NCBI RefSeq assembly: GCF_006345805.1
Contig: NC_043021.1
Coordinates: 24,614,001-24,678,000 of the forward strand
Length of the DNA: 64,000 nucleotides
From: Octopus sinensis
Taxonomy: Eukaryota
Direction of reading: 5' to 3'
Shown: piece by piece, positions 5,657 to 62,760 of the stretch
How the letters are laid out: the number at the start of each line of letters is the position of its first letter
Position numbering within the stretch: the stretch's first letter is position 1
Notes under the pieces: generated by a model
Database searches by the model: none
The model's input: the letters and a program-made list of their open reading frames with translations, nothing else
Told to the model about the DNA's origin: nothing
Position numbers and translations under genes: made by a program

Positions 5657-5952
5657 GAAGGCACGTGCTTTAGTGGGTAGAATACTCAGCCTCCAACGAT
5701 TCGGTCGTGTGTTTGATTCCTGGAGTCACGTTGTTTCTTTGAGCAAGACGTTTTCTTTCACGTTGCCCTAATCCACTCAGTTGGCTAAACTGAGCTGAAC
5801 AGGTAATTCAAAGAGCCAGTCGTGTCCCATTCCGTGTCCGGCTGAATCACCCTGAGAATTATGCTAAAAGTACACGTATCTGTCGAGTCCTCTACCCCTT
5901 GTACGTTAATTGTACGGGTAGGGTGTTCCGTTCATCAAAGCAAGTGGGACAC
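5657..5952 (+). mobile_element. Diverged tRNA-derived SINE (family C head; tail shared with 31670-31818)
   Basis: Box A/B remnants, CTTTGAGCAAGACG...TTTCACGTTGC core, tail CTGAATCACCCTGAGAA...TGTTCCGTT. Confidence 0.65.
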
Positions 5953-26454: not shown

Positions 26455-26653
26455 TCCACATAATAATAATAATATAAAAAAATAATAATAATAATAATAA
26501 TAATATAATAATAATAATAATATAATAATAATAATAATAATAATCATAATAATAATAATATAATAATAATAATAATAAAAATAATAATAATATATAATAA
26601 TAATAATGATAATAATAATAATAATAAAATAATAATAATTAATAATAATAATC

Positions 26654-26735
<82 letters not shown>

Positions 26736-26945
26736 TATAATAATAATAATACTAAAAATAATAATAATAATATAATAATAATAATAATAATAATATAATA
26801 AAAATAATATAATAATAATAATAAAAATAATAAATAATAAAATAATAATATAATAAGAATAATAATAATATAAATAATAATAATAATAATAATAAAATAA
26901 TAATAATATAATATAATGATAATAATTATAATAATAATAATATAA

Positions 26946-26976
<31 letters not shown>

Positions 26977-26990
26977 AAACATAATAATAA

Positions 26991-27040
<50 letters not shown>

Positions 27041-27070
27041 TAATAATAATATAATATATAATAATAATAA

Positions 27071-27124
<54 letters not shown>

Positions 27125-27273
27125 AATAAAAATAATGATAATAATAATAAAATATAATATAATAATAATAATGATAATAATAATAATAATAATAATATAA
27201 TAAAAAAATAATAATAATAATAATAATAAAAAATAATAATAATACTAATAATAATAATAAAATATAATAATAA

Positions 27274-27323
<50 letters not shown>

Positions 27324-27328
27324 TATAA

Positions 27329-27369
<41 letters not shown>

Positions 27370-27418
27370 GTAATAATAATAATAATAATAACAATAATAA
27401 TATAATAATAAAAATAAT

Positions 27419-27450
<32 letters not shown>

Positions 27451-27492
27451 TAATAATAATATAATAATAAAAAATAATAATAATAATAATAA

Positions 27493-27528
<36 letters not shown>

Positions 27529-27560
27529 TAATAATAATAATAACAATAATAATAATAATA
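26455..27560. repeat. About 1.1-kb degenerate (AAT)n microsatellite
   Basis: Direct reading. Confidence 0.97.
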
Positions 27561-27689
27561 ATTCTTATTATTATTTTCATTATCATCTTTCAATTCTGTT
27601 TCCATTTCTTGCCGAGAAACGCACTGTATACATTAATCGGCCATTAATATAAACACACCTGATTATTATCATTATTATTATTCCTTCGT

Positions 27690-37115: not shown

Positions 37116-38223
37116 TGTTTCTTTATTGACCACACAGGGCTGCACACAGATGGGACAAGTTACAAGGTAGAGCTTTTCTTTTGGGGGATGAAAAAAACAA
37201 AAAACAAAAGAAACAAAAAAGGGGTGGCGTAGGTTTTCGATCAAGAGGGTTCGTAAAAGGGAAGAAAAGAACAAAAAAAATAAAATAAAAATAAAAAAAT
37301 AAAAATTAAAAAAAGAAGAAAAGGAAAAGGAACAAAAGAAAAGAGAAATGAAAAAAGAAAAAAGGGGAAAAAAAGGGGAAGAGGGAAAAAAACGATCAAT
37401 AGGGATCGTGTATCACAGTGTTATGATATATGATGTAAAGGGGAAAGCAAGTAAGGTTTATCCGTGGGAAGAAAAGCCTACGAAAAAGACCACGGTAACC
37501 TTGGTCAATATTGTTATATGTTACCACATTTGTTTGCAAGTGGGTAACCCTCTGTTTTCAATTTCTGGGTTCATAGGATTATGCTCAAGGTGGCTTCGTC
37601 ATTCATACGTGCCATCCTTGCTACATTCACCCATCTTTTTTTAAAACATTCGCTAGACAAAACTAGACAAAACTTGCCTCTCTACTCTCACTTTCCTTTT
37701 CAAGTGGTACTTGAAGAAGTTGATGAGAGATTGACCAGAGAGGAAAGTGTTTGTCTCCAATACTTTCAGACGCGTCCACCAGATACATTCTTTCGCCATA
37801 GCCACAAGGATGATGAAAATAGCTCTTCCTTCCCGTTTGAAGGAAGGAGGTGTGACAATATTGACGATAGACTCGGCTGATAAACCGACATGTCCCACAC
37901 GTGACAGCAGTCGTTCGACATAAGCCCACAGGTGGGAAATTGTTGGACACTGCACGAGTGCGTGCAGAACGGTTTCGTCGCTCTGACCGCATCTCGGGCA
38001 GGCCGGCCCCGTGTTTCTCGTGCCGTGTCTGTAGAGCTTATCCCGAACGGGTAGCGCTTCTCGGTAGCACTGCCAGGCCAGAGATCTCTGGAAGTTGTCC
38101 ATGGGCCCTGGCCCGAAAGTCGTCCCGAACAGGCGGGTCAGGTACTCCTCGTCGACGTCCAGGTTCGCCCCGAGCTCGTCGTCGTACCTCCCCTCCACTA
38201 ATCCCCTATAGAATGCTTTTGTT
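37116..38223 (-). mobile_element. 5'-truncated Tx1/L1-clade LINE flanked by (GATA)n on both sides
   Basis: Uninterrupted ORF 37653-38198 with CPRCGQSDETVLHALVQC...W (zf-RVT CCHC); long 3' UTR; AATAAA at 37122-37127 (minus); (GATA)n at 37019-37115 and 38224-38330. Confidence 0.85.
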
Positions 38224-42227: not shown

Positions 42228-44046
42228 CGTATCTAAATCCCTAAACTCTAATTATAAAACCTACGAACATTTTTTCCAGCCAATCATGATTGACGTTAGT
42301 TTTTTGAAAGGCAATAACAGCAAACAGAAAACTTTAGTTTACGCGCTTAAAAACTTCATGGAACATTCTAGAATGTTTTGGCGAATTTATAAAAACTGCG
42401 CCGGTCAACTGTGAATAGGGACTTTTCGCCGTCTGCCGATCACGTCTCTCAGATTCAGAGTATTTTCATCTCTCAATTTCTCTCTCTAAGAGATTATTCC
42501 TGTTGAAAGCGACGATTGTCTCTTAAACTTTTGACAATTTCATTATTTTTTGATTAACACATAATAACATGACTGCAACGAGTTGTATATTAAAAGTGTT
42601 TATTGTTATTAAGAAATATTGTTGAAGAGATAAATAAATATTGTTGAAATAATACATGTTAAACATAACACAACAAAAAAAGAATATGGGTGTCACAGAG
42701 AAACATTTAATAAGAATATTTACTGAATACATAAGGAAAGTTTCACAACCAAATTCAGTTCAAGCAATATTTTCAGTGAATATTTTACTCGACATTTTCA
42801 ATCAAAATTATTTTTCTGCACAATTACATATTTATTATATAAATATATTCCTATTTGATTTATTTCATCCAACATTAAGTCAGTTCATATTGATGAACTT
42901 CGATGTTTAATTAACTGGAAAAGAACGCAATTTAGAAAAATAAACAGTAGAAAGCGTTTTAAAAAAGAAAGAAAAATATATATAAATAAAGAGACTCACA
43001 GTTACTCACTCTCAGTGACACGCGGCACCAGGAGCACGCGGCACCAGGAGACACGGCTGTTCTCTTCTAAAAACATTTGATACAACCCAAAACACTCACA
43101 ACATTGGAATTATACCAAAAGGACAGAACGGCGGATGATTGCAAAGCCGCAACTCTAGAACGGCCTCTTCCCTCGTTCCACCAAGCATTTGAAATTCCAA
43201 CGAAATGGAACAGCAGTGAAAAGAAAAACCTTCATTGTCAGAGACACGGCTCACGCCCAACTTTTTCAAATGTTACAGGTTGAAAAATTATTTTCTATGA
43301 ACTCATCCAGCAACATGTTATCCACAATAACATGTAGCAACGATATTCTGGGGCTATTTCGATGAAACATTATTAAGGGACATGCCCAAATAATGGAATT
43401 GTCAGTTCACATTTGCAATGTATATTTTGCTGAGAACTCCACGTAACTGTCTTTTGCCCCGTAAGCCATTTATGGCACTCCATACTTTTGGAGAATACAA
43501 ATTTATTATTCTTTAACAAGAATAGTATCGAGTGTGGCTTCGAAGTTACAGTCAACACTATTCTTAAAGAATAATGTATGAGTGTATCTATATATATATA
43601 AATATGTATGTATGTATGGGTGTGTGTGTGTGTATGTATGTATGTTTGTATGTATGTATGGGTGGGTGTGTATGTATGTATGTATGGATGGATGGATGGA
43701 TGGATGGATGGATGGGTGTGTGTGTGTATGTGTATGTATGTATGGGTGTGTGTATGTATGTATGTAAGTATGTATGTATGCATGTGTGTGTATGTATGTA
43801 TGTAAGTATGTATGTATGCATGTATGTGTGTATGTATAAATATTTTTTTTAACAGCATGACTTGAAGCAGATAAAGCTATGAGTAGCAACTTGTAAAATG
43901 TTGCGTTAAAAAATCTCTTGGATGGGAAAAATGAACCCACATCTTCCGTGAACATGACAGACGTTCTACCATTATACCAAAACAACCCGACGCATTGGAT
44001 TTCCTCCATTCGCTTTGATCTTACCAGTTAGAATTGTTTAGAAGTG

Positions 44047-45118: not shown

Positions 45119-46462
45119 TCAGAAAGTCTCCGACATCACCGTAAAGAAACAAAATGTAATCAGAATTTCCAGAAAGACAATCACACAACTGACATAGAAA
45201 AGGTAGTAATCCAAAATATCGCAAAGTTGGCGCCTGATCTCAAGACTATCGGTGATTCTGGGTTTGTCATTGATGTTAGATTCATGGACTCCGGCTACGA
45301 TTTCCGGAACGTCAGATTTCCCCGTGTTTTTAAGCAGGGGTAAAAATAAACTGCGGGTCATGTTAACAAATGAAACCAAAGTTGCTCGCTTGTTTTTCTC
45401 GTTGTTGGAAGAGTGAATTCGCTGCAAGAAGCCACCCAAACCGAATGGGAAAGTAAACGGGTTTCTGTGGCAGTGTCTGACCCGAGTGATGAAACAGGAG
45501 AGCATGAAAGTCAGAATGCATTGGATTACATAAAGAATGACAAAGACGGCCAGAATTGAAACCTGGCCGGCGCTGTGCGGTAGTATGCTGCTGAAACTGT
45601 TCATGAAAACAGCGAAAGAAAGAATAAGAACATTGGAGAAGGATATTTTTTCGCCAGAGTCAACTGGTATCAAAAAGACGAGTGTTGTACAGAAATACAT
45701 GAGAAGCAATGGCGATATAACAACGAGCATGTAATAAAGATAATTACGTTGGATAGTGAAAAAGAAATAGATTTTACTGGCGCAAACGTCGCTGGAGACT
45801 TTTTCGTTCATTTTCGCTTCAACCTTCAGCAGACGCCAACCATCATGAATGCTAAAGTGAGACATATTGTATGCGTTATCAGGGTGTACGTTGATGCACA
45901 CTCTGTTTTCTATGTCGGCCAGAGTGGAGAAGACTATTTCACAGACTTGTGTATCGAACGGAAAGTGAGATACTTTGATGCGACAATGAGTCGTGTAGAC
46001 GTCCGTACTTTTCATGTAGGTATTTCCGGTATAGTCGATTCGTAACAGCTGTGATACCATTGTGAAAGCATTAACGGCGTTGATGACCATCAGTGGCGGC
46101 GTCCAGATGGAAGTAGATTTCAGAACAAGATGTTTAATTCCTTCGTGTTTTGAAGGATCCCACGTCAAAATTTCGTCTGTCCACTGCTGGAAAATCGAAC
46201 CTTTTAAAGAGAAGATTTCATTTTTCTCGTCTATACTGACGATATAGTCGAGATAAAAAGTCACAAACAATTGAATATGATCAGTTGAATTATAGATGGG
46301 TCTGATCTCACTGTCGTAATCCTTCATTAGTTCTTTTTTTAATCGGATCTCTGGGGACAATTTGCTTCCTGAACAGAGAGTAGACTGTATCGACAATGTT
46401 AATGCCAGCAATAGAAATGATAATGTTGGTGACGGCGGAAACAGCGACGTTCGGTCGGCCAT
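45119..46462 (-). CDS. Intronless atypical nicotinic-receptor-like Cys-loop ion channel subunit (cephalopod chemotactile-receptor-like), 447 aa
   Basis: ATG at 46462 gives a signal peptide (MADRT...LSFLLLALTLSIQSTLCS); DYDSEIRP, WTD..L.WDP, Cys-loop CRIKVSHFPFDTQVC (45941-45985), M1 to M4, GEK motif; no vicinal Cys in loop C; no stop codons or introns. Confidence 0.92.
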   Translation of the reverse strand: MADRTSLFPPSPTLSFLLLALTLSIQSTLCSGSKLSPEIRLKKELMKDYDSEIRPIYNSTDHIQLFVTFYLDYIVSIDEKNEIFSLKGSIFQQWTDEILTWDPSKHEGIKHLVLKSTSIWTPPLMVINAVNAFTMVSQLLRIDYTGNTYMKSTDVYTTHCRIKVSHFPFDTQVCEIVFSTLADIENRVCINVHPDNAYNMSHFSIHDGWRLLKVEAKMNEKVSSDVCASKIYFFFTIQRNYLYYMLVVISPLLLMYFCTTLVFLIPVDSGEKISFSNVLILSFAVFMNSFSSILPHSAGQVSILAVFVILYVIQCILTFMLSCFITRVRHCHRNPFTFPFGLGGFLQRIHSSNNEKNKRATLVSFVNMTRSLFLPLLKNTGKSDVPEIVAGVHESNINDKPRITDSLEIRRQLCDILDYYLFYVSCVIVFLEILITFCFFTVMSETF

Positions 46463-46650
46463 ATTGATAGGAAGAGACTCAGTTGGAAAGGAATGGTGTA
46501 AGAATGAAAATATATTGAAAGAAACGAAGAGATGAAGATAGACGAGCGACAGGATGCTGGAGAAGTTTGGAAAGTGAGACACATCGATAAATAGCAATAA
46601 ATATATAACAGCTTCCTGCAGGAGCTTCTTTTTGATTGGATAAGAAAGAA

Positions 46651-46686
<36 letters not shown>

Positions 46687-47079
46687 AGAAAGAAGAAAGA
46701 AAGAAAGAAAGAAAAGAAGGAAGAAAACAAGCAAGAAAAAAAGAAAGAAAGAAAGGAAAGAAGGAAGAAAACAAGCAAGAAAAAAAGAAAGAAAGAAAGG
46801 AAGAAAGAAAGAAAGCGTAGATAAGTAAACAAAAAATTTTAAAAAAGCAAGTATATGAAATAATTATCTAAAGATTAAAAAATCTCGTGATGGTGGTGTG
46901 GGGGCGGCCGATAGAGAAAGAAAGATAAAGAGATTGAGAGAGGGAAGGAGGAGAAAGAAAGACACGGGTAGGTAAGTGGGGTGGTAGAGAGACAGACAGA
47001 CAGATAGAATCGGGTGGCTATTGATGGAGAAGAAAGAAGTGTATTTCTATTGATTCGTTAAGTTTTCTTGTACGGCGGA

Positions 47080-51559: not shown

Positions 51560-52240
51560 GGGTTCCAGAGATACCGGGGCAAACAATGGGACAGACTATA
51601 GGGAATTTGTGATAAAGCAAACGGAGTGAATACGTGATACGAGACGGATAAATATCAAGGGATGCTGTTTGTAGGGGCGATGCTGCAATGGGAGTTAAGC
51701 AGCGAATTTCGGAAGGCTCTGAAGGACACCAAACTCAACACTAAGGCCGTTGGAAAACCAGAGAGGTCCATTAGATCTCAATTATGTAAGACGTACCCTT
51801 TTGACAAAACCACATGTACTGATAGGGACTGTGTAGGATGTACCTTTAAACCCAGTATTAATTGTTAGACCAGAACTGTGGGGTACAGCATAAAGCGCAT
51901 GGAGCGGGGGGCTGTAAGAACAGGAATGCAACATACTTTTGGGGAGACGTCTGGGAGCCTAGCGGAGAGACTAAATGGACGTTGTCGGAAATATAATGAC
52001 AAGAAACCGTCGTCTATATTCTGTCAGCATTTTAGAGATCGACATGGCGGCATGCTGAGCCGAATTAACATCGACATTATGTCTAAACATTCATGAGAGA
52101 TATCAGAGAGATAAATATGTGAAATGGTTCTTAGAAATGAGACATTACCGATATTTAATAGAAAATATACAGAGGAGGTAACAGAAGCTGAAGGCTGCTG
52201 CTACCACCCACGCAACACGGATGCGTCCGTGTGAGTAGGT
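51560..52240 (+). mobile_element. Penelope-like element GIY-YIG endonuclease relic
   Basis: C-x4-C-x2-C...INC*TRTVGYSI...TFGETSGSLAERL...QH resembles the PLE pattern VVY.I.C...YIGET.RSL.ER..EH. Confidence 0.65.
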
Positions 52241-52380
52241 AGGATGTATGTGATGGCATTGGCAAGTATAAAAGGGTTAGGGTTCGAACGACAGCGGAAT
52301 GCATGTAACCTATGCAAAGAAATGCATGTAAATATGTACAATTCCAACAGCTATGAAGAATTCATTTGTGTATCTCTCGA

Positions 52381-52575
52381 TGTGTTTGTCCCCCTAGCAT
52401 TGCTTGACAACCGATGCTGGTGTGTTTATGTCCCCGTCACTTAGCGATTCGGCAAAAGAGACCGATAGAATAAGTACTGGGCTTACAAAGAATAAGTCCC
52501 GGGGTCGAGTTGCTCGATTAAAGGCGGTGCTCCAGCATGGCCGCAGTCAAATGACTGAAACCAAAAAAAAGAGAG
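52381..52575 (+). mobile_element. SINE family B 3' module
   Basis: Nearly identical to 35830-36020. Confidence 0.9.
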
Positions 52576-52892
52576 AAATATATATATGTATATACACATA
52601 TATACATTATATATACATACATATATACATACATATATACATACATATATATATATGTAGAAATATATATACACACACACATTATTAACATCCCTTAAAG
52701 TAATAATGTATTTTAAAAAGTTAAAAAATTATATACTTTATTTATTTTATTTATTTTTATTTTATCTAGTTTCAGCTCACGAGCTGTGGCCATGCTGGGG
52801 CACCGCCATTTGGTGTTGCTACATGATTTTACTTCCCGAATGCTTTTTAGCAACTGCCATTTGGTGCATGAGAGAGTTCGACGCAGCTGCCC

Positions 52893-55734
52893 TCATCTGC
52901 ACCTCCTGCCGTGAAGTTGGTTCATCCGGGACACCGGACACCGGACACCATGCAGGTCCCTCAGGTTCTTCGGGAGGATATTGAAGAGCTGTGGGCCTCT
53001 GAAGCCCAGGCTATCACAGTATCTTGTCCTACATCTTGATGGCAAATTTGGAGTCCTTGGCACCACGCAGTGGCGCCCAGTTCTGGCATTTGTGTAACTC
53101 TCGATGCCAAAGTTTGGGACAAGTCCTTCCAGGATCTTCCAGATGTATATTATGGCATATCTTTCTCGCCTACGCTCCAAGGAATAGAGTTTTAATCTCT
53201 TGAGTCTTTCCCAGTAGCTTATATGCTGCACAGAGGCTATCTTCTTCGTGTAGCTTCGTTGGATCGCCTCAAGTTCTGTGATCAACTTGACACTGGATGG
53301 TGACCATAGCTGAGAGCAATAGTCAAAGTGGCTTAGGACAAGTGTCCTCCAGAGGACCATCATGGTTTCTTGGTCTCTTGTTCTAAAGGTTCTAAGAATC
53401 CATCCGGCCAGCCGTCTACATTTCATTGCCAATTTAGCAACATGTACATGAAAGGTTGCATCATCACTCATGTAAATACCCAGGTCACGCACTGATTGTG
53501 CCTCTGGGATTGCAATCCCTCCAGGTCCAGTGTATTTATTGGGTATTGCATTTAGTTTTGCATGCTGATAGCATAAAGCTTGAAACTTTTCAGCATTGAA
53601 CTGCATGCTATTCTTTTCAGCCCACTTGTATATTTTGTCCAGCTCACATTGCAGGTGCTTAGTGTCTTCAGGGTTCTGTATTGCCTGTGAAACTTTTGTA
53701 TCATCTGCATAACTTGTGATCGTGGCTCTCTGCGTGCTGAGGGCATGTCTGAGAGGGCCATTATGAACAGTAGTGGTCCCAAAACAGTGCCCTGCGGAAC
53801 ACATATACAAACATGCATATTGGCTACTACCACCTGACTTCTATCCTTCAGAAAGTCATGACGCCATTCTCCCAATTTTCCAACTATGCCAAGATCACGG
53901 AGTTTGTGACATATCATTCCATGATCGACTTTATCAAAGGCCTTTGCAAAGTCGAGATATATCACTTCCACATTTGAGTGGTTGAGCAGTCGTTTCAGCA
54001 CCCAGTCATAGTGTTGTAGGAGCTGAGTTAAGCAGCTTCTTCCTGGTCGGAAACCATGTTGGGTGTCAGGCAGCAAGTCATTTTCTTCAAGGAAGGTGAT
54101 TAGTTTCCTTCTGACTATTCGTTCCATGACCTTGCTGATGTGTGAGGTCAGAGAGATAGGTCTGTAGTTCTTGGCCTCCGCTCTGCTACCTCCTTTATCA
54201 ATAGGGCATATTTTACCTTCCTTCAGTTTTCTTGGAAGTTTGCTAGTTGCAAGGAAGCTCTGAAAGAGGAACTGCAGTGGTCTTGCTAGGACTCTCTTAC
54301 ATACTTTTAGGATTACCGGGAATCCATCGGGGCCAGTAGCTGAGTTTGTTTTCATTTCATCTATAGCTTTTATTACATCGTCTTCCTTTATATTGATGTA
54401 ATCAATCATCGCTGCCTCTGATTTTATATCTGCAGTGGTAAAGAAGTCAGTTGGATTGCTGATTTGGAAATGCCCAAGGGGTGGAGTGAAAACACTCTTG
54501 AATTGCTCATTTAGTATTTCACTTACCCTCATTGGATTTCCTGTGAGTGTGCCATCCTTTTCAAGGAGTGGCCCTATCCTACAGTGCACCGTAGCTGTCT
54601 CTTTGGCATACCTGAAGAAAGCTCTGGGGTTAGATTTTATGTTGTCTATTGCCCAGGCTTCTTTGTCTGCTCTTTCCTTTTCATGGGAGAGTTGTAGACA
54701 TTTTTCAATTTCCAACAGTTTTATTTTCAGGCGGGACTTTTCACTGCTTTCAATTTGTTTGTTTAGGCGATTTGAAACTTTTGTACGCCGTCTCATTAGA
54801 ATTTTCCTCTCTCTGGGGATTTTGTTCTTGTGTATAGTGGCCTTTCTCTCTGGGACACATTTGTAGCATATGGCTTGCATTACAGACATGAATTGTTGAA
54901 GTTTCATGTCGATGTCTGGCGAGGAGAGACATTCAGGCCAGTTTTGTTTGAGGATCTCTTTCTCAATTTGTTTCCAGTTTGCCTTATGGAAGTTCAAGCA
55001 GAAAAGATTCTGAGAGTTTCTTGTAGGCTGCATGTCCATGCTTTCCTTTGGCCCGTACATGGTCAGCTCTACCATGTTGTGATCCGAGAGTAGTGTCGGT
55101 ATCACTTTCACATTATGGATGAGATCCATATCATTTGTGAAGCAGAGATCCAGTATGTTACCTGCCCTGGTTGGTTGGAGTATTACTTGCTCCATGTACA
55201 GGGTGTTGATGAGGTTCAGGAGGGACCTCGCCTGTCCTCGTTCACATCGTGTCATTCCTGGGAGAGAAAGGCCCTCGGGCCATCTGACATTGGGTAGATT
55301 GAAGTCTCCCATAAGAGATACACTTATGTGTTGTTCTAATGTGACTAGAACTTCTATTTTTATAGGCAGTCTTCAAACTTGCCTACATGGCTTGCGGCAT
55401 CTGGAGGGCGATATGTAGCACACACAACTACACCAAGTTGCCTTATATGTACAATTAGTGTGTCACACACCGAGTTTGAGTATGACAAAAGGACCTGGGG
55501 TGTGAGGTCTCCACGGATGTACATAGCAACTCCTCCATGACTCCTTTCTTTTCTGTCGGTCCGTAGTACAACATACTGTGGTATATGTAATTCCGCATCT
55601 GCTATGTCCGGTTTCAGGTGTCTTTCCGTAAGTGCTATGCATAAGGCTTGATTACATGCAACAAAGTCTCTCAAGAACGGGATTTTTGTCATGTTACTGT
55701 GTGTTAGCAGCCCTCTGATGTTCAGTAGGAGCAT
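52893..55734 (-). pseudogene. LINE ORF2 (endonuclease/reverse transcriptase), disrupted
   Basis: Three ORF segments (55360-55734, 53552-55312, 52893-53810) separated by frameshifts and small deletions. Confidence 0.9.
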
Positions 55735-56657
55735 TGAGGTGAGGTGTATGCTGTTGCCGGCGGTGTCCACCTTGGGTCTATTTGCTGTGGCGGTCTTGTG
55801 TATTGTGGATGATCCCATCTGCGAGTTTGAGTTTGATGGAGCCAGGTTAGCTGCTGTACAATCTTTTGTGCCATGCACAAAAAAGATTCTTGTTCAGCAG
55901 TTGCCCTTTCAATAACATGCTGGCGGTTTGTATCGCGCACCACATCTGCGTACCTCCCTTTTGGGGCAGGTGGTGCGTGGTCCATTCCTTTTCCTTTTGG
56001 TAGTTGGTTTCTGACCTGTTTCGAGTTTATGTGGCAGGGTCTTCGATGTGCAAAACGGCAGTCTGCACCTTCATCTCCATGCCAGCAGACACCTTTCATG
56101 TAGAATTTACATATTCGTGTGCTCTGTCTGTTTCTATCCTTTTTGGTACATGGATAGTCAGGTTTGCTTCTATCCTTGGCTGTTTCATCTTTTGGTTTTG
56201 TTTGAGTTTTAGTTTTTCCTTCTTTGGCTGTTTCCTCTTTTGTTCTTTTTGTTTTTCCTCCTTTTATTTCTTTTTTGGCTCTTTCATCTCCATGGCTTTT
56301 GATGCTGGTAGGAGCACTTACACTTGGGTTTACTTCCCGGGCAGGTTTCTCACTTGAATCTTCTTCCTGGGTGTTTACCAAGTGGGGGTGACATCTTTCA
56401 TCAGCACCCGCGCCTTCATCCTTGCCATCTTTACTTTGTTCGTTGTCAAAGATGGCATCAAGCGTGCCAATATGAGATCTTATGAGTGCATAGGAGCGTA
56501 TAAACTCCTGCTTTTTTCGCTCTATCTGCGCTATCGTTCTTTTATATCCACTGCTCTTCAGCGCAGCTGTAATTATGTTGTTCGGATTATCTCCGTCGGC
56601 GTATCGCCAGGCTCTCAGAAACAACGCCAATTCGTTACTTTTCCAGGTTCTGGACAT
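55722..56657 (-). CDS. LINE ORF1 protein: N-terminal Myb/SANT (trihelix)-like helices plus CCCH zinc finger
   Basis: Intact 311-aa ORF; W-x4-E...W...I..AL..SGY.RT..Q...K pattern; CKFYMKGVCWHGDEGADCRFAH. Confidence 0.75.
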   Translation of the reverse strand: MSRTWKSNELALFLRAWRYADGDNPNNIITAALKSSGYKRTIAQIERKKQEFIRSYALIRSHIGTLDAIFDNEQSKDGKDEGAGADERCHPHLVNTQEEDSSEKPAREVNPSVSAPTSIKSHGDERAKKEIKGGKTKRTKEETAKEGKTKTQTKPKDETAKDRSKPDYPCTKKDRNRQSTRICKFYMKGVCWHGDEGADCRFAHRRPCHINSKQVRNQLPKGKGMDHAPPAPKGRYADVVRDTNRQHVIERATAEQESFLCMAQKIVQQLTWLHQTQTRRWDHPQYTRPPQQIDPRWTPPATAYTSPQCSY

Positions 56658-56920
56658 TTTTGATATTTTATTTATTTATCTATCTAATTATATTAATTTA
56701 ATAGTGCGATAGAGGGTAGAGAAGAAATAGAGAAAGAAAGTGTCTATGTATTTAAAGAGAGATTGAGAGCTGAAAGAAGAAGAGAGTAATGATGAGACAA
56801 GGAAAGGCGTGAGGGAGAGAAGTGAAGAGACAAAGAGAGAAAGAAGAAATAGAAAATGAATATATATCTGTCCGTAGCTACAATTTCTTCTAAACTAAAC
56901 TAATTGCGACTATACTTCTA

Positions 56921-56979
<59 letters not shown>

Positions 56980-57607
56980 TATGCACATACACATATATAA
57001 ACAAAGTAACAAATAAATATATAAATAAATAGATGTAACGGAGCTAAAACAGAAACCGAAAGATTATTACAGAATGTAAACAGAGAATAGGCCCTTACAT
57101 TGAATTACGGGAAAATAAATAAATGAAAAGGGGTACTTATCTTATAAGAGGTAGAAGTCCCAAAATCTTCTCCCTATACGAAGAGGTTTTTTTCAAAAAA
57201 AGAAAAGAAAAACGGTTCTTTTTGCTGTTAGAGTCGACTGGAAATAAATCTAAAAGATGTCACCACGTGCTTTTTTCGACGGGGAATCTGGCATGCGTAA
57301 TTAAATTTAGTGTTTTATATTTGGCTTGTAGCGAAATATATTGCGGTTTTTAACCAAAATATCGTAGTACACCACTATGAGATAGCAAGTTCTACTTTTT
57401 TATGAGTTTTCGCCGATTATTTCGTCGATTTATGCAAAGTTTTTTGTTTTTTTTATCACAGAGCAAAGCAACACGTCTTTACTCTACGAAAACCGGAAGT
57501 ATATATTATATTAATTTTTTACCTTAATTGGTTTTACACGCTGGCTACTTGATAAAACCTTATATAGATTTTATCCTTATATTTAATTGATATATATATA
57601 TAAAACG

Positions 57608-57856
57608 CTGTGAGCGGATTTGGTTAGATGGAAACTGGAAGAAGCCCTTTATGTGTCTGTCTGTGTGTCGCCGCTTGATGACAAGTTGTTGGTTTGTTGA
57701 CATCCTCATAACTTAGCGGCGCCGCATAACAGACCGACAAAATAAGTACCAGGCTTCAAAACAAAACAAAAAACCCGATTCGTTCGACTAAAACTCTCCA
57801 AGATGGTGCCCCAGCATGGCCACAGTCTAATTACTGAAACAAATAAAGTATAAAAT
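57608..57856 (+). mobile_element. Old, diverged SINE family B copy
   Basis: GGATTTGGTTAGATGGAAACTGGAAGAAGCCC...GGTGCCCCAGCATGGCCACAG. Confidence 0.75.
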
Positions 57857-57871
57857 ATATATTACACAAGA

Positions 57872-58478
57872 CAGAATGTTCGGACTAAATTTGACAGTTT
57901 GCATAAAATGAAAAGAAAACACAGGAACCCATCCAAAAATATCCACAAGATTATGGCCGGGAGATAAGAGTTGCCACCCTCAGCTTCCACATCGGCCTCA
58001 AGACGGCTCCTCCAGAACTTGGCACATGCATTCCTAACTGTGTCCTTGGGAACATCTTGGCCATCAGCCCGACCTTGGTGTCACAGGCAGAGCAGTTGGT
58101 GTCTTTCTCAACCATGTCCCATACAGTAATCCATGGGATTTCAATCAGGAGAATTAGGAGGCCAGAAATTAGGGGCTGGTGGTGAAGTCGAAGACATTCT
58201 CTGACAACCACTTCTGACTCTTTCCGGTGGGATGGTAAGGAGCCAAGTCCTGGTGCCACACATATGGCCTTCCGGTAATAACTCTCTCCAGCCATGATAC
58301 AGGTAACTCTTTTCCAATATTCAGATGGCTTCCAGTCTACCTGGTCAGCTGACTTTTTCTCAACTACATCTTTAACCTTTATGCTCTCCAACGCCGTTGA
58401 CTTTTTGCCAATACGTCGAGCTGTTTCTAAAAAAAAAAGAGACTCAAAAAAATCGTCAAATTTATACCGAACACCCTG
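57872..58478 (-). mobile_element. Internally deleted maT-type Tc1/mariner element
   Basis: TIRs CAGAATGTTCGGACTAAATTTGAC / GTCAAATTTATACCGAACACCCTG; FWPPNSPD*NPMDY, VWDMVEKDTN remnants. Confidence 0.8.
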
Positions 58479-58984
58479 TATATTGATGGAGTTGTGCAAC
58501 TGAAACCTTAATTGCTAAAGTTTATTTTTTAGGGAAATTTCTTAATTGTTTTCCCTTGCTGATTCCCTTGCTGTCCTATGGAAGACAATAGTTTCAAATA
58601 GTTATCAGTTTGAAATCTCTAAGTAGCAAGACCCCAGCTGAAATTTGAACCCTTGCTCTTGAATTTTGCCAAAATAGAACCATGAACCAATGTAATTCCA
58701 TAAATGGTGTTAACACCGATGTGAATATGGCCGAACCAAACAGCACTAATGATTTATCAAGGTGGAAGAGGCAGACTTGGAAAGAAGAATGCGAAATGGA
58801 AACTGCTTTACAAAAGCTAACAAATTCAACCACAGCCCCGAAAGCGCTGAGGAGGATTCTGTGCCGTTGGTTGAAGTGAGTCGTTCTGTCTGTGAGTCTT
58901 TTTTTCTAACAAGTAATGCACAGTCACTAGATACAATGGTTTAAATTCTTTGTACTTCTTTCAAATTTTACTCTGAAAGTTATA

Positions 58985-59205
58985 CGACAGGGTGCTGAAA
59001 AGTTCCAGGTTTTAAGGGTATCAAAAAAAGGCCTGGTTGGAGGCCCAACCTTCCGAATTCTTTTGCAGGGCTTAAAAAAACTGAAGGACCACTGCAATAA
59101 GATAGTGAATCTGAGAGGGGAATGTGTTGAATAAAATCATAATTAACTGATCCTGCTGTGTTTTCTTTTATCCAAAACTAGGAACATTTCAGCCCCACCC
59201 CCTCG
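58985..59205 (+). mobile_element. mariner-derived MITE
   Basis: TA-flanked TIR-like ends CGACAGGGTGCTGAAAAGTTCC / GGAACATTTCAGCCCCACCCCCTCG; internal remnant of a mariner C-terminus (NLRGECVE*). Confidence 0.75.
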
Positions 59206-59352
59206 TATACAGAGGATTTTTAATTTTAGTGTTCCAATGAAGTAATCCATTTATTATTATAATGATGTAGATTAATGAAATATTTGGAAACTCAAAGTTT
59301 ACTCTACCTGTATGTCAGTCCATCCATTTATATTATATATATATGTATATAT

Positions 59353-59648
59353 ACCTACCTCGAGTCAAAACCTGGCTCATAAGGGCCGATTGCCCAGTTT
59401 CACTGGCGTATAGGTTCCCCAGCTGGCTGGGACGCCGGTCTGTTGCAGGTGAGCTGCTAGATGCAGGAGGAAAAAGTGGGAGAAAGTTGTGGCGAAAGAG
59501 TCAGCAGAAGTTGACCGTTACCTTCTGCCAGAGCCGCGTGGAGCTAAGGTGTTTCGCTCATAAACACACACATCGCACGGTCTGGGATTTGAACCCGCGA
59601 TCCCTCGACCATGAGTCTGCTGTGCAAACGAGTAGGCCATGTGCTTCC
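59353..59648 (-). mobile_element. SINE family D head with a third tail type
   Basis: Minus-strand GGTTCAAATCCCAGACCG...TTATGAGCGAAACACCTTAGCTCCACGCGGCTC; tail unlike 21853 or 31491. Confidence 0.75.
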
Positions 59649-60347
59649 ACACATACCTATATATATGCATGCATACCTACATGCATCCACCTATGTATAT
59701 ATACTTACCTATACCTGTATGCATCTACATATATATATATATATACTTATATATACACATACCTACCTATATATGTGTGTGTGTGTGTGTATTATAATTA
59801 AGTATATGAGTTAGAGGTTAGACAACCATCTAAGGGATAATAAATATCCAATATACTACTGGATGTATACCTATGTATCTATATAACAAAAGTTTACCCA
59901 GAGTTTATAAGGAAGAAAATGGAGAAGATAATTAATTGACAAACATCAGCTAGATCTATTGATTGATTACAATTATATAAATAAATAAATAAATGAGTGA
60001 ATATAACTCTACCCTTACAGCTGTTTCTTCTTTGGGGGTCCAGTGTGCCAAAGTTGACACATCATGCCAAGATTAGACAAGCATTGTACAAAAATGAAAC
60101 AGAAATTGGACAAAAATTGAACCCCAAAGCTTCGTCAGAGTCCATAATGACAAGGATTAAACAAGTAAAAAAGTAAAATAAAATAATAAAAATACTAAAG
60201 AATAGTAAAAAGTAAAATCCAAGATAATATCCAGAGGTTGTGAGATTACATCTTATTTCAATCTGATAGTCTATCCCCCATTGGATTGGAAGCTGATGTT
60301 TGTCAATTATCTTCTCCATTTTCTTCCTTGCTTTATATATATATCTA

Positions 60348-60752
60348 CACTAGCAGTATCGCCCGGCGTTGCTCGGGTTTGTAAGGGAAATAACTATATA
60401 AGCATTTTTAGAGAGTTATAGCCAAAAAGTAGCAAAAAGGTGCATTAAAAATGGGAAAAAAATTATGGTAAATTTTTTTTAAATCGTTGACTCGTCATAG
60501 ACATTTTTAGAGAGTTACTTCCCTTATATGATAGCGTAAAAAATGCATTAAAATGGAAAAAAATGATGGTAAATTCTTTTTTAAATCGTAGACTCATTGT
60601 AGACGCACGCTAATACCCAGAAGGGCTCGATATGAATCACGACTATAAGATACCCGGTTTTGGTTAAACTGCACCGCAAAATGTGGGAGTAGTTAGGAAT
60701 CTAAATCGTAGGAGACAGACACTCACACAACTTCACTTTTATATATAAAGAT
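60348..60752 (+). mobile_element. Helitron/Helentron-type non-autonomous element (HINE/Lep1-like)
   Basis: 5' CACTAGCAGTATCGCCCGGCGTTGCTCGGG stem; 3' CACACAACTTCACTTTTATATATAAAGAT; TA-rich flanks; same architecture as 31873. Confidence 0.65.
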
Positions 60753-61663
60753 ATATATATATATATAAAATATGAATTAGAGATAAAACCACTATGAGGC
60801 AACTCAAACAGTGATAGACATAAACCAATACATAAATAACAAATAATATTATCTCTAATTCATATTTTCTATATTTATACTGTGAAATTTTATTTAATCC
60901 TCAATCTTATTTTTCCCTGTAAGTTTGGAGTCACACTCCCTATTATTATTATTATGATATATATATAATCCCTTCAAATAACAGTTGAATTTTCAACTCC
61001 AAAGTTTTTGAGTATCGTTTGTGTTCAATCCGTGGCATCCCATATCTAGGTTGGCCTACGTTGGCGCGACTGTCATATCCATGATTGATCCCAATTTTTG
61101 CCAATTCTTTTTTGGACTTTGTCTTTTTTATTGAACTTTAAATAATTTTCTTGCTATAAGGACCAGTATTTTATAAGAGTCTAGCAAATATTTATAATCC
61201 TCTTTATGCGGTGTGTGTGACAGTGCTTACACAACAATAGCGTCGGGTAAATGCTTGATTAGTTCAAATTCTTAAAATTCAGCCCCTTGATCAGAGTAAG
61301 ATTATCCAGAAGCAGGTGAGTCGACTAGAAAAGATTGAGCAAACATCAATAGAGATGTATAAACATGTGTATAGATAATATAGAGATGTTATTACCTAAT
61401 TTCACATTCTATAACATCTTTACATCTGTTTCGATACATTCTGTGAAATGGCCATATTAACAGAGATATTTCAGTTGGTCTAAAAACATTATAAGGCAAT
61501 ATTACTAAAAAAAAAACCAAAAGTATCATGATTCATGTATGCTTGCTTGTACCCTTTCGAGAAATATTACCAAATAATGTTTGCACCAAATTGCATAATA
61601 TCCATATTCACATCAACAATTCACATGATACAGCGAAACACCTGTAACCATTTATATATATAT

Positions 61664-61705
<42 letters not shown>

Positions 61706-61944
61706 GTGTGTGTGCACACGTGTCTTTACACTAACATTCAGGTAAAGGTGAGAGTGTTGATGTCACTCAGGTACAAAAAGCCTGATGTTATTTCATCTAA
61801 AGTCATGAAGTAACATTCCTTATTCAAAACACAAACCTCCACAGAATACAACCCAAGTAAATTTTGTTCTAACTCCTTAGAAGTATTGGAGAATTGGATG
61901 TTAAAATGATGATGATGATGAGGAGGAGGATGACGTAACATGGT

Positions 61945-62760
61945 CGGTAATTTTTTGTGGGAAGGGGGAATAATCGATTATATTAACCTCACTACTTGAC
62001 TGGTCCTTTATTGACCCCAAAAGGATGAAAGGTAGAGTTGACCTTGATGGAAGCGAAACCCAAAATGCAAGGAGTTGGAAGAAATACCATTTGGCCCAGT
62101 GCAGTAATAATGCTGCTGGATCACTACATTAATAATAATAATAATAATAATAATGGTTTTTGATTAAGGCACAAAGTTATTTTGAGGGGTGAGGACTGAT
62201 ACCATCAACCCACCTCCCTCCCCCCACCAAACAAAAGATAAAATGCAAAATTGTCTTCAGCAGGGTTTGAAACCTCAATGTAAGATCAGATGTACTGCAA
62301 AACATTTTATCCAACATTCTGATAACTCTGGCAGCTCAGATTGTTTCAAATTTTGACACAAAATTAGAGGACAGGGTTCAGTTAATTACATCAACCCCAG
62401 GACATAACAGGTACTTTATTGGCCCTAAAAGGATGAAAATCAAAAATGACCTCTGTGGAATTTAAAGAAATGGTAGAATTGCCGCTAAGCATTTGCCTGA
62501 CACAAACTTTCACCACAATAATAATAATATAATAATAATAATGGTTTCAAATTTTGCCACAAGGGCAGCGGCTTTGGAAGAGATGAGTCGATTGCATTGA
62601 CCCCCTAGTGTTCAACTGGTACTTATTTTATCGACCCCAAAAGGATGAAAGGCAAAGTTAACCTTGCCAGAATTTTGACTCAGAATGTAAAGACTGATGA
62701 AACGCCACTAAACAATTTCGTCCAGCTTACTAACAATCTGACCAGTTCACAAACTTTCAC
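61945..62760 (-). mobile_element. Cluster of old family-A-like SINE copies separated by (AAT)n
   Basis: GACCCCAAAAGGATGAAAGG (reverse of the family A core) recurs at about 62010, 62425 and 62635. Confidence 0.65.

What the first reader, a model, noticed from the sequence alone, without database searches (positions are those of the whole stretch)
45119..46462. Intact intronless orphan Cys-loop receptor lacking the whole ACh-binding cage: candidate cephalopod chemotactile/sensory channel
Seen: signal peptide, C-x13-C loop, four TMs and a short M3-M4 loop. My alignment by eye to alpha-nAChR motifs shows loop A WTPPLMVIN (no Tyr), loop B FSTLAD (no Trp), loop D GSIFQQWTD (no Trp) and loop C KVSSDVCASK (no YxCC, no Tyr). 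The pore keeps GEK (cation-selective), L9' and V13' but is unusually rich in Ser/Asn. Known: octopus has an expanded, intronless, clustered set of atypical nAChR-like genes, including sucker chemotactile receptors that detect poorly soluble molecules. Inference: a ligand-diverged cation channel whose ligand is probably unknown. It is the only intact host ORF among decayed TEs, implying purifying selection. Only one copy is visible in 64 kb.
Basis: partly seen in the sequence, partly recalled or inferred. Interest (0 to 1): 0.85.

Follow-up and report, generated by a model that had tools for sequence, protein, structure and literature searches.

The report
Orphan octopus nicotinic-like channel subunit
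This is an intact, intron-free octopus gene for a nicotinic-receptor-like ion-channel subunit that has lost every residue needed to bind acetylcholine, but it is not one of the octopus "taste-by-touch" chemotactile receptors, and what activates it is unknown.

Summary
Window 45119-46462 (-) is one uninterrupted 447-aa reading frame encoding a complete Cys-loop receptor subunit: signal peptide, C-x13-C loop, four membrane helices and a GEK cation-type pore. The acetylcholine aromatic box and the loop C Cys-Cys pair are absent.

It is a real, selected gene.
- Single-exon orthologs exist in O. vulgaris, O. bimaculoides (XP_014770834.1, 90% identical) and Argonauta hians (66%).
- dN/dS is 0.21 overall and 0.035 in M1-M3. 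M2 is 100% identical between Octopus and Argonauta.

The chemotactile-receptor interpretation is not supported. I recovered CRT1, squid CRB1 and 33 further relatives.
- This 35-member family is monophyletic without our protein in 200/200 NJ bootstraps.
- A CR-family HMM scores our protein 155-160 bits. CR members score at least 403, and the median non-CR homolog scores 175.
- All CR relatives with a genome record lie on one other chromosome per species. The O. sinensis CRT1 ortholog has a tandem paralog 5.5 kb away.
- Our gene is solitary in 64 kb.

Cage loss and intronlessness are common in mollusc nAChR-like genes.

The best reading is an orphan nAChR-family cation-channel subunit, seen so far only in octopods, that does not bind acetylcholine. 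Its pore has an unusual Val at 6' (0 of 123 homologs). The gene is already annotated but uncharacterised. Interest is moderate.

The parts
45119..46462 (-). Complete single-exon CDS (447 aa plus stop) of a divergent nAChR-family Cys-loop receptor subunit
   Evidence: An identical protein exists in the public collection, and single-exon orthologs are found in O. bimaculoides and Argonauta.
46364..46462 (-). Signal peptide region (aa 1-33; hydrophobic core LSFLLLALTLSI)
   Evidence: Read from the sequence. AF2 predicts a helix at 12-28 with low or modest confidence. This is the least conserved region versus Argonauta, at 24%.
45743..46363 (-). Extracellular ligand-binding-type domain (aa 34-240) without the ACh aromatic box
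   Evidence: Pfam PF02931, E = 1e-39. Residue mapping. dN/dS is 0.20.
45941..45985 (-). Cys-loop, C160-RIKVSHFPFDTQV-C174
   Evidence: It is 93-100% identical among orthologs.
45473..45742 (-). M1-M3 transmembrane block (aa 241-330)
   Evidence: AF2 helices at 241-264, 271-293 and 303-330. dN/dS is 0.035 versus O. bimaculoides and 0.05 versus Argonauta.
45584..45652 (-). Pore helix M2 (aa 271-293), EKISFSNVLILSFAVFMNSFSSI. It has E-1', K0', L9' and V13', plus the unusual N5', V6', I8' and S17'.
   Evidence: 100% identical between Octopus and Argonauta. V6' occurs in 0 of 123 homologs, N5' in 1 of 123 and I8' in 0 of 123.
45260..45472 (-). Short M3-M4 intracellular loop (aa 331-401)
   Evidence: It is 44% identical to Argonauta, apart from the conserved stretches NPFTFP and SFV..TR.LFLPLLK. 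No PDB sequence matches aa 329-447, which include it.
45122..45259 (-). MA-M4 helix and C-terminal tail (aa 402-447). The last 19 residues are invariant between Octopus and Argonauta.

Best explanation
The gene encodes a functional subunit of a pentameric, cation-selective Cys-loop channel of the nicotinic-receptor family. It is a single-copy, intronless lineage found so far only in octopods (Octopus and Argonauta). It lies outside the chemotactile-receptor family.

Shown here:
- The protein has the full fold and an intact gating interface: the beta1-beta2 loop, the Cys-loop FPFD motif, pre-M1 and the M2-M3 loop.
- It has a GEK / L9' / V13' pore.
- All of this is under strong purifying selection.
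- It has none of the aromatic-box residues on either face of the classical site, and no loop C Cys-Cys pair.

Inferred:
- It cannot be activated by acetylcholine through the canonical cation-pi site.
- My preferred mechanism (about 0.4) is that it works as a non-ligand-binding or modulatory partner in heteropentamers with other octopus nAChR-like subunits. It would contribute pore and gating elements rather than the agonist site.
- The reason is that the classical binding loops A, B, C and E are among the least conserved parts of the ectodomain, while the pore and coupling elements are nearly invariant.
- A homomeric ring of Val at 6', stacked under L9' and V13', would also be an unusually long hydrophobic stretch.
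- Nearly as likely (about 0.3) is that it forms its own receptor for an unidentified non-cholinergic ligand.
For: Family and fold:
- Pfam LBD, E = 1e-39.
- The best solved-structure matches are muscle and neuronal nAChR subunits, at 1e-41 to 1e-28.
- The AF2 model has pLDDT 86, and the Foldseek top 50 are all nAChR chains.

Selection:
- Single-exon orthologs are 90% (O. bimaculoides) and 66% (Argonauta) identical.
- dN/dS is 0.21 overall, 0.20 in the ECD and 0.035 in M1-M3.
- dS of 0.21 matches the 78-88% identity of the collinear flanks.

Loss of the cage.

Conservation pattern, Octopus versus Argonauta:
- M2 100%, Cys-loop 93%, M2-M3 89%, loop F 87.5%.
- Loops A, B, C and E 50-54%.

Unusual pore: V6' occurs in 0 of 123 homologs, where 120 have Thr or Ser.

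Outside the CR family:
- The CR clade is monophyletic without it in 200/200 bootstraps, and it is sister to the CR clade in 0/200.
- The CR-family HMM gives 155-160 bits, against at least 403 for members and a median of 175 for non-members.
- phmmer scores against CRs are 57-111 bits, against 131-160 bits for about 150 other homologs (those checked by name are all non-cephalopod).
- BLASTP identity is 27% to CRT1 and 21% to CRB1.
- It is on a different chromosome from the CR relatives that have a genome record and has no neighbouring paralog.
Against: - No expression, assembly or electrophysiology data could be examined, so both the heteromer and homomer mechanisms are inference.
- The ectodomain as a whole is still under purifying selection (dN/dS 0.20). 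Loop F and residues S89, K151 and D183 are conserved, which fits a real ligand site as well as an accessory role.
- The trees are neighbour-joining on saturated distances. The sister group of this lineage is unresolved (any partner at most 36%).
- My CR set holds about 13-14 O. bimaculoides sequences, while the literature counts 26 CRs. A CR subgroup that the word-indexed search missed cannot be formally excluded.
- Absence outside octopods is only as good as the collection's coverage of squid and cuttlefish proteins.
Confidence: 0.6

Rival explanations
1. It is a chemotactile or other peripheral sensory receptor, expressed in sucker epithelium and gated by poorly soluble molecules (terpenoids, steroids, bitter compounds), like CRT1 or CRB1.
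For: - It shares general CR traits: intronless, ACh cage lost, cation-type GEK pore, short M3-M4 loop.
- It shares a WTPP motif in loop A and a Tyr at the CRT1 Y39 position (our Y70) with CRT1.
- In the point-estimate NJ tree, its small group sits next to the CR clade.
- The binding loops are the variable part of the ectodomain, as reported for the outer CR pocket (bioRxiv 10.1101/2025.10.28.685082).
Against: - It is excluded from the 35-member CR clade in 200/200 bootstraps. Proximity (a joint clade of at most 50 of 163 taxa) occurs in only 16/200.
- It scores below the median non-CR homolog against the CR HMM.
- It lacks the CR M2 motif SLATTIFLSN, the loop A / loop B Cys pair seen in the three octopus CRs aligned (absent from squid CRB1) and the CR loop F deletion.
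- It is solitary and on another chromosome, whereas the CRT1 ortholog has a paralog 5.5 kb away and all mapped CR relatives share one chromosome per species.
- The putative pocket contains conserved charged residues (D183, K151) rather than a flat hydrophobic surface.
- WTP also occurs in a non-CR homolog, P0139.
Confidence: 0.15
2. It forms a homomeric (or self-sufficient) receptor for an unidentified non-cholinergic ligand. This could be an endogenous transmitter, a metal ion or protons. It would be comparable to other orphan lophotrochozoan nAChR-like channels such as Alpo4.
For: - The ectodomain is under purifying selection (dN/dS 0.20).
- Loop F YNMSHFSIHDGW, with two His and one Asp, is invariant between Octopus and Argonauta, along with S89, K151 and D183.
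- Alpo4 is a comparably good solved-structure match (1.3e-35). It is likewise ACh-insensitive and lacks the signature ligand motifs (PMC10338036).
- Octopus pLGICs with non-classical ligands exist, for example the dopamine-gated DopC1 (bioRxiv 10.1101/2025.04.02.646353).
Against: - Loops A, B, C and E are only 50-54% conserved between Octopus and Argonauta.
- A ring of five Val at 6' is unprecedented among 123 homologs and may disfavour conduction in a homomer.
- No ligand can be proposed from the sequence.
Confidence: 0.3
3. It is a retrocopy relic without function that merely has not yet accumulated a stop codon.
For: - It is intronless and sits among retrotransposon debris and microsatellites.
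- No transcript evidence was found in the tools available.
Against: - The frame is open in four genomes spanning the Octopus-Argonauta split.
- dN/dS is 0.21, and 0.035 in the membrane block. M2 is 100% identical although synonymous sites are saturated versus Argonauta (pS 0.78).
Confidence: 0.03

Closest known systems
Cephalopod chemotactile receptors (CRT1, PDB 8EIS/9E6B/9YI4; squid CRB1, PDB 8EIZ)
   Same: Both are nAChR-derived pentameric channel subunits. Both are intronless, have lost the ACh aromatic box, and have a GEK cation-type pore and a short M3-M4 loop. They share WTPP in loop A and a Tyr at the CRT1 Y39 position.
   Different: - Identity is 27% to CRT1 and 21% to CRB1.
- Our protein is excluded from the CR clade in 200/200 bootstraps, and its CR-HMM score is below the non-CR median.
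- It has no SLATTIFLSN M2 motif and no loop A / loop B Cys pair.
- Loop F is three residues longer than in CRs, and M1 has the canonical LYY form.
- It is solitary on another chromosome, whereas CRs lie in tandem arrays.
Expanded intronless, divergent nAChR-like genes of lophotrochozoans (PMC6896357: 99-217 nAChR genes in bivalves, 78 in O. bimaculoides; intronless copies are widespread in molluscs)
   Same: - The nearest non-orthologous relatives (27-32% identity) are such genes from bivalves, gastropods, flatworms and rotifers.
- 106 of 123 lack the loop C Cys-Cys pair, and 25 of 123 lack aromatics at loops A, B and D as well.
- P0139, which groups nearest most often in the bootstraps, is also single-exon.
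   Different: - This lineage has no stable sister (at most 36% bootstrap).
- It is single-copy rather than tandemly expanded.
- It carries unique pore residues (V6', I8') and a lineage-specific Cys pair, C189 and C227.
Alpo4, the orphan Cys-loop receptor of Alvinella pompejana (PDB 8BX5; PMC10338036)
   Same: Both are lophotrochozoan nAChR-like subunits without the signature ACh-binding motifs and with no known agonist. Alpo4 is a strong solved-structure match (1.3e-35).
   Different: Alpo4 is no closer than vertebrate nAChRs. It has a 16' Met constriction, whereas our pore has N16' and V6'. Orthology was not tested and is not suggested.
Non-ligand-binding structural or accessory nAChR subunits of vertebrates (muscle beta1; neuronal alpha5 and beta3). 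This analogy comes from my own knowledge.
   Same: - The subunit keeps its pore and gating elements but does not provide an agonist site.
- NCBI names the O. bimaculoides ortholog 'acetylcholine receptor subunit beta'.
- Human and Torpedo beta1 are among the best PDB matches (6e-39 and below).
   Different: This is only a functional analogy, with no orthology. Partner subunits are unknown, and co-assembly is untested.

Membership tests
[quoted passage not shown] | N-terminal beta-sandwich ligand-binding-type domain (Pfam PF02931) | tested here: met
   E = 1e-39, 136.6 bits against a 26-bit cutoff. The AF2 model has pLDDT 86.
[quoted passage not shown] | Cys-x13-Cys loop with an FPFD motif | tested here: met
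   C160-RIKVSHFPFDTQV-C174.
[quoted passage not shown] | Four transmembrane helices, with M2 lining the pore and L9' | tested here: met
   AF2 helices at 241-264, 271-293, 303-330 and 402-446. PF02932 scores 25.7 bits, just below its 28.1-bit cutoff. L9' and V13' are present.
[quoted passage not shown] | Cation-type selectivity filter (Gly-Glu-Lys/Arg at -2' to 0', with no Pro-Ala-Arg) | tested here: met
   The sequence is DSGEK. E-1' is shared with 118 of 123 homologs. Ion selectivity itself was not measured.
ACh-binding (alpha-type) nAChR subunit | Vicinal Cys-Cys in loop C | tested here: not met
   Loop C is VSSDVCASK, with a single Cys, C227.
ACh-binding (alpha-type) nAChR subunit | Aromatic box on the principal face (alpha1 Y93, W149, Y190, Y198) | tested here: not met
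   The aligned residues are I127, L181 and S224. Y232 aligns only uncertainly and is His in Argonauta.
Complementary-face (non-alpha) ACh-binding subunit | Loop D Trp (alpha7 W55, gamma W55, delta W57) | tested here: not met
   The residue is S89, conserved in all four orthologs. 43 of the 127 aligned sequences have Trp in this column.
Cephalopod chemotactile receptors (CR) | Phylogenetic placement inside the clade that holds CRT1 and CRB1 | tested here: not met
   The 35-sequence CR clade is monophyletic without it in 200/200 NJ bootstraps, and it is sister to the CR clade in 0/200. The CR-HMM gives 155-160 bits, against at least 403 for members. Caveats: the method was NJ only, and the CR set may be incomplete.
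Cephalopod chemotactile receptors (CR) | Intronless coding sequence | tested here: met
   The CDS is a single exon in the window, in O. bimaculoides and in Argonauta. This is not specific to CRs (PMC6896357).
Cephalopod chemotactile receptors (CR) | Tandem clustering with other CRs | tested here: not met
   There is no paralog in the 64-kb window or within 10 kb either side in two other species. The gene lies on a different chromosome from the CR relatives that have a genome record. The CRT1 ortholog has a paralog 5.5 kb away.
Cephalopod chemotactile receptors (CR) | Loss of ACh-binding residues | tested here: met
   The trait is shared with 25 of 123 non-CR homologs.
Cephalopod chemotactile receptors (CR) | Family sequence signatures (M2 SLATTIFLSN; the loop A / loop B Cys pair of octopus CRs; the shortened loop F) | tested here: not met
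   Alignment.
Cephalopod chemotactile receptors (CR) | Expression in sucker sensory epithelium | not testable with these tools
   No expression data were reachable. The Logan contigs that carry CRs end in (TA)n repeats and are genomic, so they say nothing about transcription.
Cephalopod chemotactile receptors (CR) | Activation by poorly soluble hydrophobic ligands and not by ACh | not testable with these tools
   This needs electrophysiology.

The most novel reading that the evidence does not exclude
This may be a second, independent departure from cholinergic signalling among cephalopod nAChR-family genes. It would be a single-copy lineage, found so far only in octopods, that is unrelated to the chemotactile receptors. 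It would form, or be essential to, a channel gated by a ligand class not yet known for Cys-loop receptors. Candidate features are its unusual hydrophobic 6' Val pore ring, an invariant His/Asp-rich loop F, and a lineage-specific Cys pair (C189 and C227) that could staple loop C.
Probability: 0.2. Interest if true: 0.65.

Novelty: new member of a known kind. Interest (0 to 1): 0.35.

Why it matters
Octopus chemotactile receptors are a textbook case of a neurotransmitter receptor turned into a sensory receptor. This gene shows that the traits used to spot them from sequence are not sufficient: being intronless, having lost the ACh cage, and having a cation-type pore. An octopus gene with all three lies outside the CR family.

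If the gene proves functional, it offers three things:
- A conserved, single-copy test case for what ACh-blind nAChR-like subunits do, whether as an accessory subunit or as a receptor for a new ligand.
- A natural experiment on a hydrophobic 6' pore position that is otherwise almost invariably Thr or Ser.
- A practical point for annotation: the public names ('alpha-6-like', 'subunit beta', 'alpha-like') disagree with one another, and the alpha names do not fit a subunit that lacks the loop C Cys-Cys pair.

Tried and rejected
1. Finding CRT1 in the solved-structure library with our protein, its ortholog profile or sub-regions failed.
- CRT1 never reached the 60 rows shown.
- The region from loop B to pre-M1 and the C-terminal region (aa 329-447) match no PDB sequence at E <= 10.
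- A candidate sister, P0163, was not a CR either.

2. Several key papers are not held: van Giesen 2020, Allard 2023, Kang 2023 and Albertin 2015.
- Accession searches for the gene found no paper.
- A search for 'CR518' returned noise.

3. The CR seed finally came from an alignment in the supplement of bioRxiv 10.1101/2025.06.15.659772.

4. Counting against alpha7 and CRT1 Y58 shows that the ligand position is S89.

5. I considered using the absence of Logan contigs for our protein as evidence of low expression. I rejected this because the Logan contigs that carry CRs end in (TA)n on both sides and are genomic.

6. I considered equating our L181 with the conserved CRT1 L153. In the alignment L153 falls one column later, so I make no claim.

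7. A retrogene poly(A) tail or target-site duplication was not visible downstream of the stop codon.

8. Whether C189 and C227 form a disulfide could not be checked, because model coordinates are not exposed.

9. The idea that CR840 might be XP_014770840, a near neighbour of our XP_014770834, is pure numerology and could not be tested.
Full report
**What is there.** Window 45119-46462 (minus strand) is one uninterrupted reading frame of 447 codons plus a stop. The mechanical ORF extends upstream to 46774. That part is an (AAGA)n microsatellite read in frame, and the first Met is followed by a typical signal peptide.

Evidence for the fold:
- Pfam gives Neur_chan_LBD at E = 1e-39 over almost the whole profile. 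Neur_chan_memb scores just under its threshold.
- An AlphaFold2 model built on 127 homologs has mean pLDDT 86 and pTM 0.77. It shows the beta-sandwich ectodomain, M1-M3, a short intracellular loop and a long MA-M4 helix.
- Its best structural matches are all muscle or neuronal nAChR chains.
- The best sequence matches among solved structures are human and Torpedo alpha1 and beta1, alpha7, alpha4/beta2, 5-HT3A and the annelid orphan Alpo4, at 1e-41 to 1e-28.

I mapped residues with the HMMER alignment to human alpha1 and two MAFFT alignments.

| Site | Canonical residue | Our residue |
|---|---|---|
| Loop A | Y93 | I127 |
| Loop B | W149 | L181 |
| Loop B | Y151 | D183 |
| Loop C | Y190 | S224 |
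| Loop C | C192-C193 | V226-C227 |
| Loop D | ligand Trp | S89 |

- W94 is the structural Trp five residues further on. CRT1 Y58 / W63 and alpha7 W55 / W60 show the same spacing.
- Only Y232 might correspond to Y198. Loop C is shorter, so the alignment is unsure, and Argonauta has His there.
- The pore reads E-1', K0', S2', L9', V13', N16', S17', S20'.

**It is a real gene under selection.**
- The identical protein is in the public collection.
- O. vulgaris CAI9741029.1 ('alpha-6-like') differs at two residues. O. bimaculoides XP_014770834.1 ('subunit beta') is 90% identical. Argonauta hians GAB1607972.1 ('alpha-like') is 66% identical.
- In O. bimaculoides and Argonauta the CDS is also a single exon.
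- The O. bimaculoides locus is collinear with the window. Flanks are 78-88% identical, against about 93% in the CDS.
- Nei-Gojobori dN/dS against O. bimaculoides is 0.21 overall, 0.20 in the ectodomain, 0.035 in M1-M3 and 0.12 in M4. Synonymous sites are saturated against Argonauta, yet dN is only 0.26.
- Between Octopus and Argonauta, M2 is 100% identical, the Cys-loop 93%, the M2-M3 loop 89% and loop F 87.5%. The classical binding loops A, B, C and E are only 50-54% identical.

**It is an orphan lineage.**
- An exhaustive HMMER scan of 1.84 billion cluster representatives found the Argonauta ortholog. After it, nothing is better than about 32% identity (E about 1e-42 for single-domain hits), apart from one broken gene model at 35% over short stretches.
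- The 20 best hits that I could name are bivalve, gastropod, flatworm, rotifer, nematode, hemichordate or crustacean nAChR-like proteins. None is from a cephalopod.
- There is no paralog or pseudogene fragment in the 64-kb window, or within 10 kb either side in the other two species.
- Its sister group is unstable in bootstrapped NJ trees, with any partner at 36% or less.
- Among the 123 nearest homologs, 106 lack the loop C Cys-Cys pair. Twenty-five also lack aromatics at loops A, B and D.
- The literature reports that intronless nAChR genes are widespread in molluscs, and counts 78 nAChR-like genes in O. bimaculoides (PMC6896357).
- Cage loss plus intronlessness is therefore not diagnostic of chemotactile receptors.

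**Test of the chemotactile-receptor idea.** The primary CR papers are not held. I took a CR paralog (LOC106875776, O. bimaculoides) from a supplementary alignment of bioRxiv 10.1101/2025.06.15.659772. It hits PDB 8EIS / 9E6B (CRT1) at 5e-115 and squid CRB1 (8EIZ) at 2e-38. The residue numbers agree with the published Y39, Y58, F124, L153 and L191 (10.1101/2025.10.28.685082). A profile of these three sequences retrieved the family: CRT1, CRB1 and dozens of relatives from O. bimaculoides, O. sinensis, O. vulgaris and unnamed sources.

Results:
- Our protein is 27% identical to CRT1 (96 bits) and 21% to CRB1 (73 bits).
- phmmer scores against all CRs are 57-111 bits, below about 150 other homologs at 131-160 bits; those checked by name are all non-cephalopod.
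- In a 163-taxon alignment the 35 CR sequences are monophyletic in 200/200 bootstraps without our lineage. Our lineage is their sister in 0/200. A joint clade of 50 taxa or fewer appears in 16/200.
- A CR-family HMM scores members at 403 bits or more and our four orthologs at 155-160 bits. That is below the median (175) of 197 non-CR proteins.
- The alignment shows CR signatures that ours lacks. These are the M2 motif SLATTIFLSN, a Cys pair in loops A and B of the three octopus CRs shown, a three-residue deletion in loop F, and a changed M1.
- All CR relatives with a genome record lie on a single chromosome per species (58.2, 59.5 and 78.3 Mb). Our gene lies on others (35.5, 45.6 and 28.9 Mb).
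- The O. sinensis CRT1 ortholog has a tandem paralog 5.5 kb away.

Residual resemblances to CRs are WTPP in loop A and a Tyr at the Y39 position, but WTP also occurs in a non-CR homolog. I therefore do not file the gene as a CR. There are two caveats. The trees are NJ on saturated distances. My set has about 13-14 O. bimaculoides CR sequences, against 26 in the literature (PMC11526382).

**How it probably works.**

Shown:
- The fold is complete and the gating interface is intact.
- The pore is cation-type and under very strong constraint.

Inferred:
- With no aromatic box on either face, it cannot be activated by ACh in the canonical way.

A new observation is that position 6' of M2, which is Thr or Ser in 120 of 123 homologs, is Val here (0 of 123). 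N5' (1 of 123) and I8' (0 of 123) are also unusual. All three are invariant from Octopus to Argonauta.

I lean (about 0.4) towards a non-ligand-binding or modulatory partner in heteropentamers, for two reasons:
- The binding loops are among the least conserved parts of the ectodomain, while the pore and coupling elements are nearly frozen.
- Five Val at 6' under L9' and V13' would make an unusually long hydrophobic stretch in a homomer.

An own, unknown ligand is nearly as likely (about 0.3). That view is supported by ectodomain dN/dS of 0.20, the invariant His/Asp-rich loop F, and the conserved S89, K151 and D183. A sensory, CR-like role remains possible (about 0.15) but has no specific support. 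A dead retrocopy is effectively excluded.

**Novelty and verdict.**
- The gene is already in public annotation under three inconsistent names, and I found no paper that mentions it.
- It is a new, uncharacterised member of a known kind: the divergent, intronless, ACh-blind nAChR-like subunits of lophotrochozoans.
The unusual 6' Val pore is a point worth testing.
- Interest is moderate, at 0.35.

Noticed in passing
window 52172-62379: About 10.2 kb is absent from the collinear O. bimaculoides locus (junction at L002 ~5758-5760). It carries frameshifted LINE-type ORFs: an endonuclease plus RVT_1 at 53552-55312(-), an RVT_1 tail at 52893-53810(-) and a zf-CCCH ORF at 55722-56657(-). This looks like a lineage-specific retrotransposon insertion.
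   Followed up: partly
window 45584-45652 (M2, aa 271-293): The pore helix has Val at 6' (0 of 123 homologs; 120 have Thr or Ser), Asn at 5' (1 of 123) and Ile at 8' (0 of 123). All are invariant between Octopus and Argonauta.
   Followed up: partly
window 45782-45784 and 45896-45898 (C227 and C189): Two Cys are invariant in the four orthologs and absent from those alignment columns in all 123 homologs. One is in beta8 and one in loop C. They may form a lineage-specific disulfide that replaces the vicinal Cys-Cys.
   Followed up: no
window 45836-45871 (aa 198-209, loop F): YNMSHFSIHDGW is identical between Octopus and Argonauta, although loop F is usually variable and loops A, B, C and E are only about 50% conserved. 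It contains two His and one Asp.
   Followed up: no
window 46642-46815 and 43603-43837: An (AAGA)n array lies 180 bp upstream of the ATG. It accounts for the 'SFFLSFFL' extension of the mechanical ORF. A (TATG)n array lies downstream of the gene.
   Followed up: yes
window 26460-27562: An (ATA)n array of about 378 copies explains the GC content of 0.17 in that 2-kb bin.
   Followed up: yes
window 37653-38198: An ORF with a zf-RVT domain (E = 1e-8), which is another reverse-transcriptase fragment.
   Followed up: no
L011 10001-11233 and 16715-17917 (O. sinensis CM016874.1): The CRT1 ortholog is a single exon of 410 aa, with a 400-aa paralog 5.5 kb downstream. All CR relatives with a genome record sit on one chromosome per species. 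The three octopus CRs aligned share a Cys in loop A (KMCNS) and one in loop B (YLCVA), which squid CRB1 lacks.
   Followed up: partly
L006-L010 (Logan contigs SRR11869384-94): Contigs that carry a CRT1-like gene (83% identical to CRT1) mostly end in (TA)n repeats, at both ends where the contig reaches them. They are therefore genomic rather than transcript assemblies. No ortholog of our protein was recovered from Logan at all.
   Followed up: partly
L004 10001-11287 and 18554-19594: An ENA metagenome contig of 251 kb carries two intronless Cys-loop receptor genes 7 kb apart, near phage-integrase-like and Dam-like ORFs. This is probably invertebrate host DNA within a metagenome assembly.
   Followed up: no
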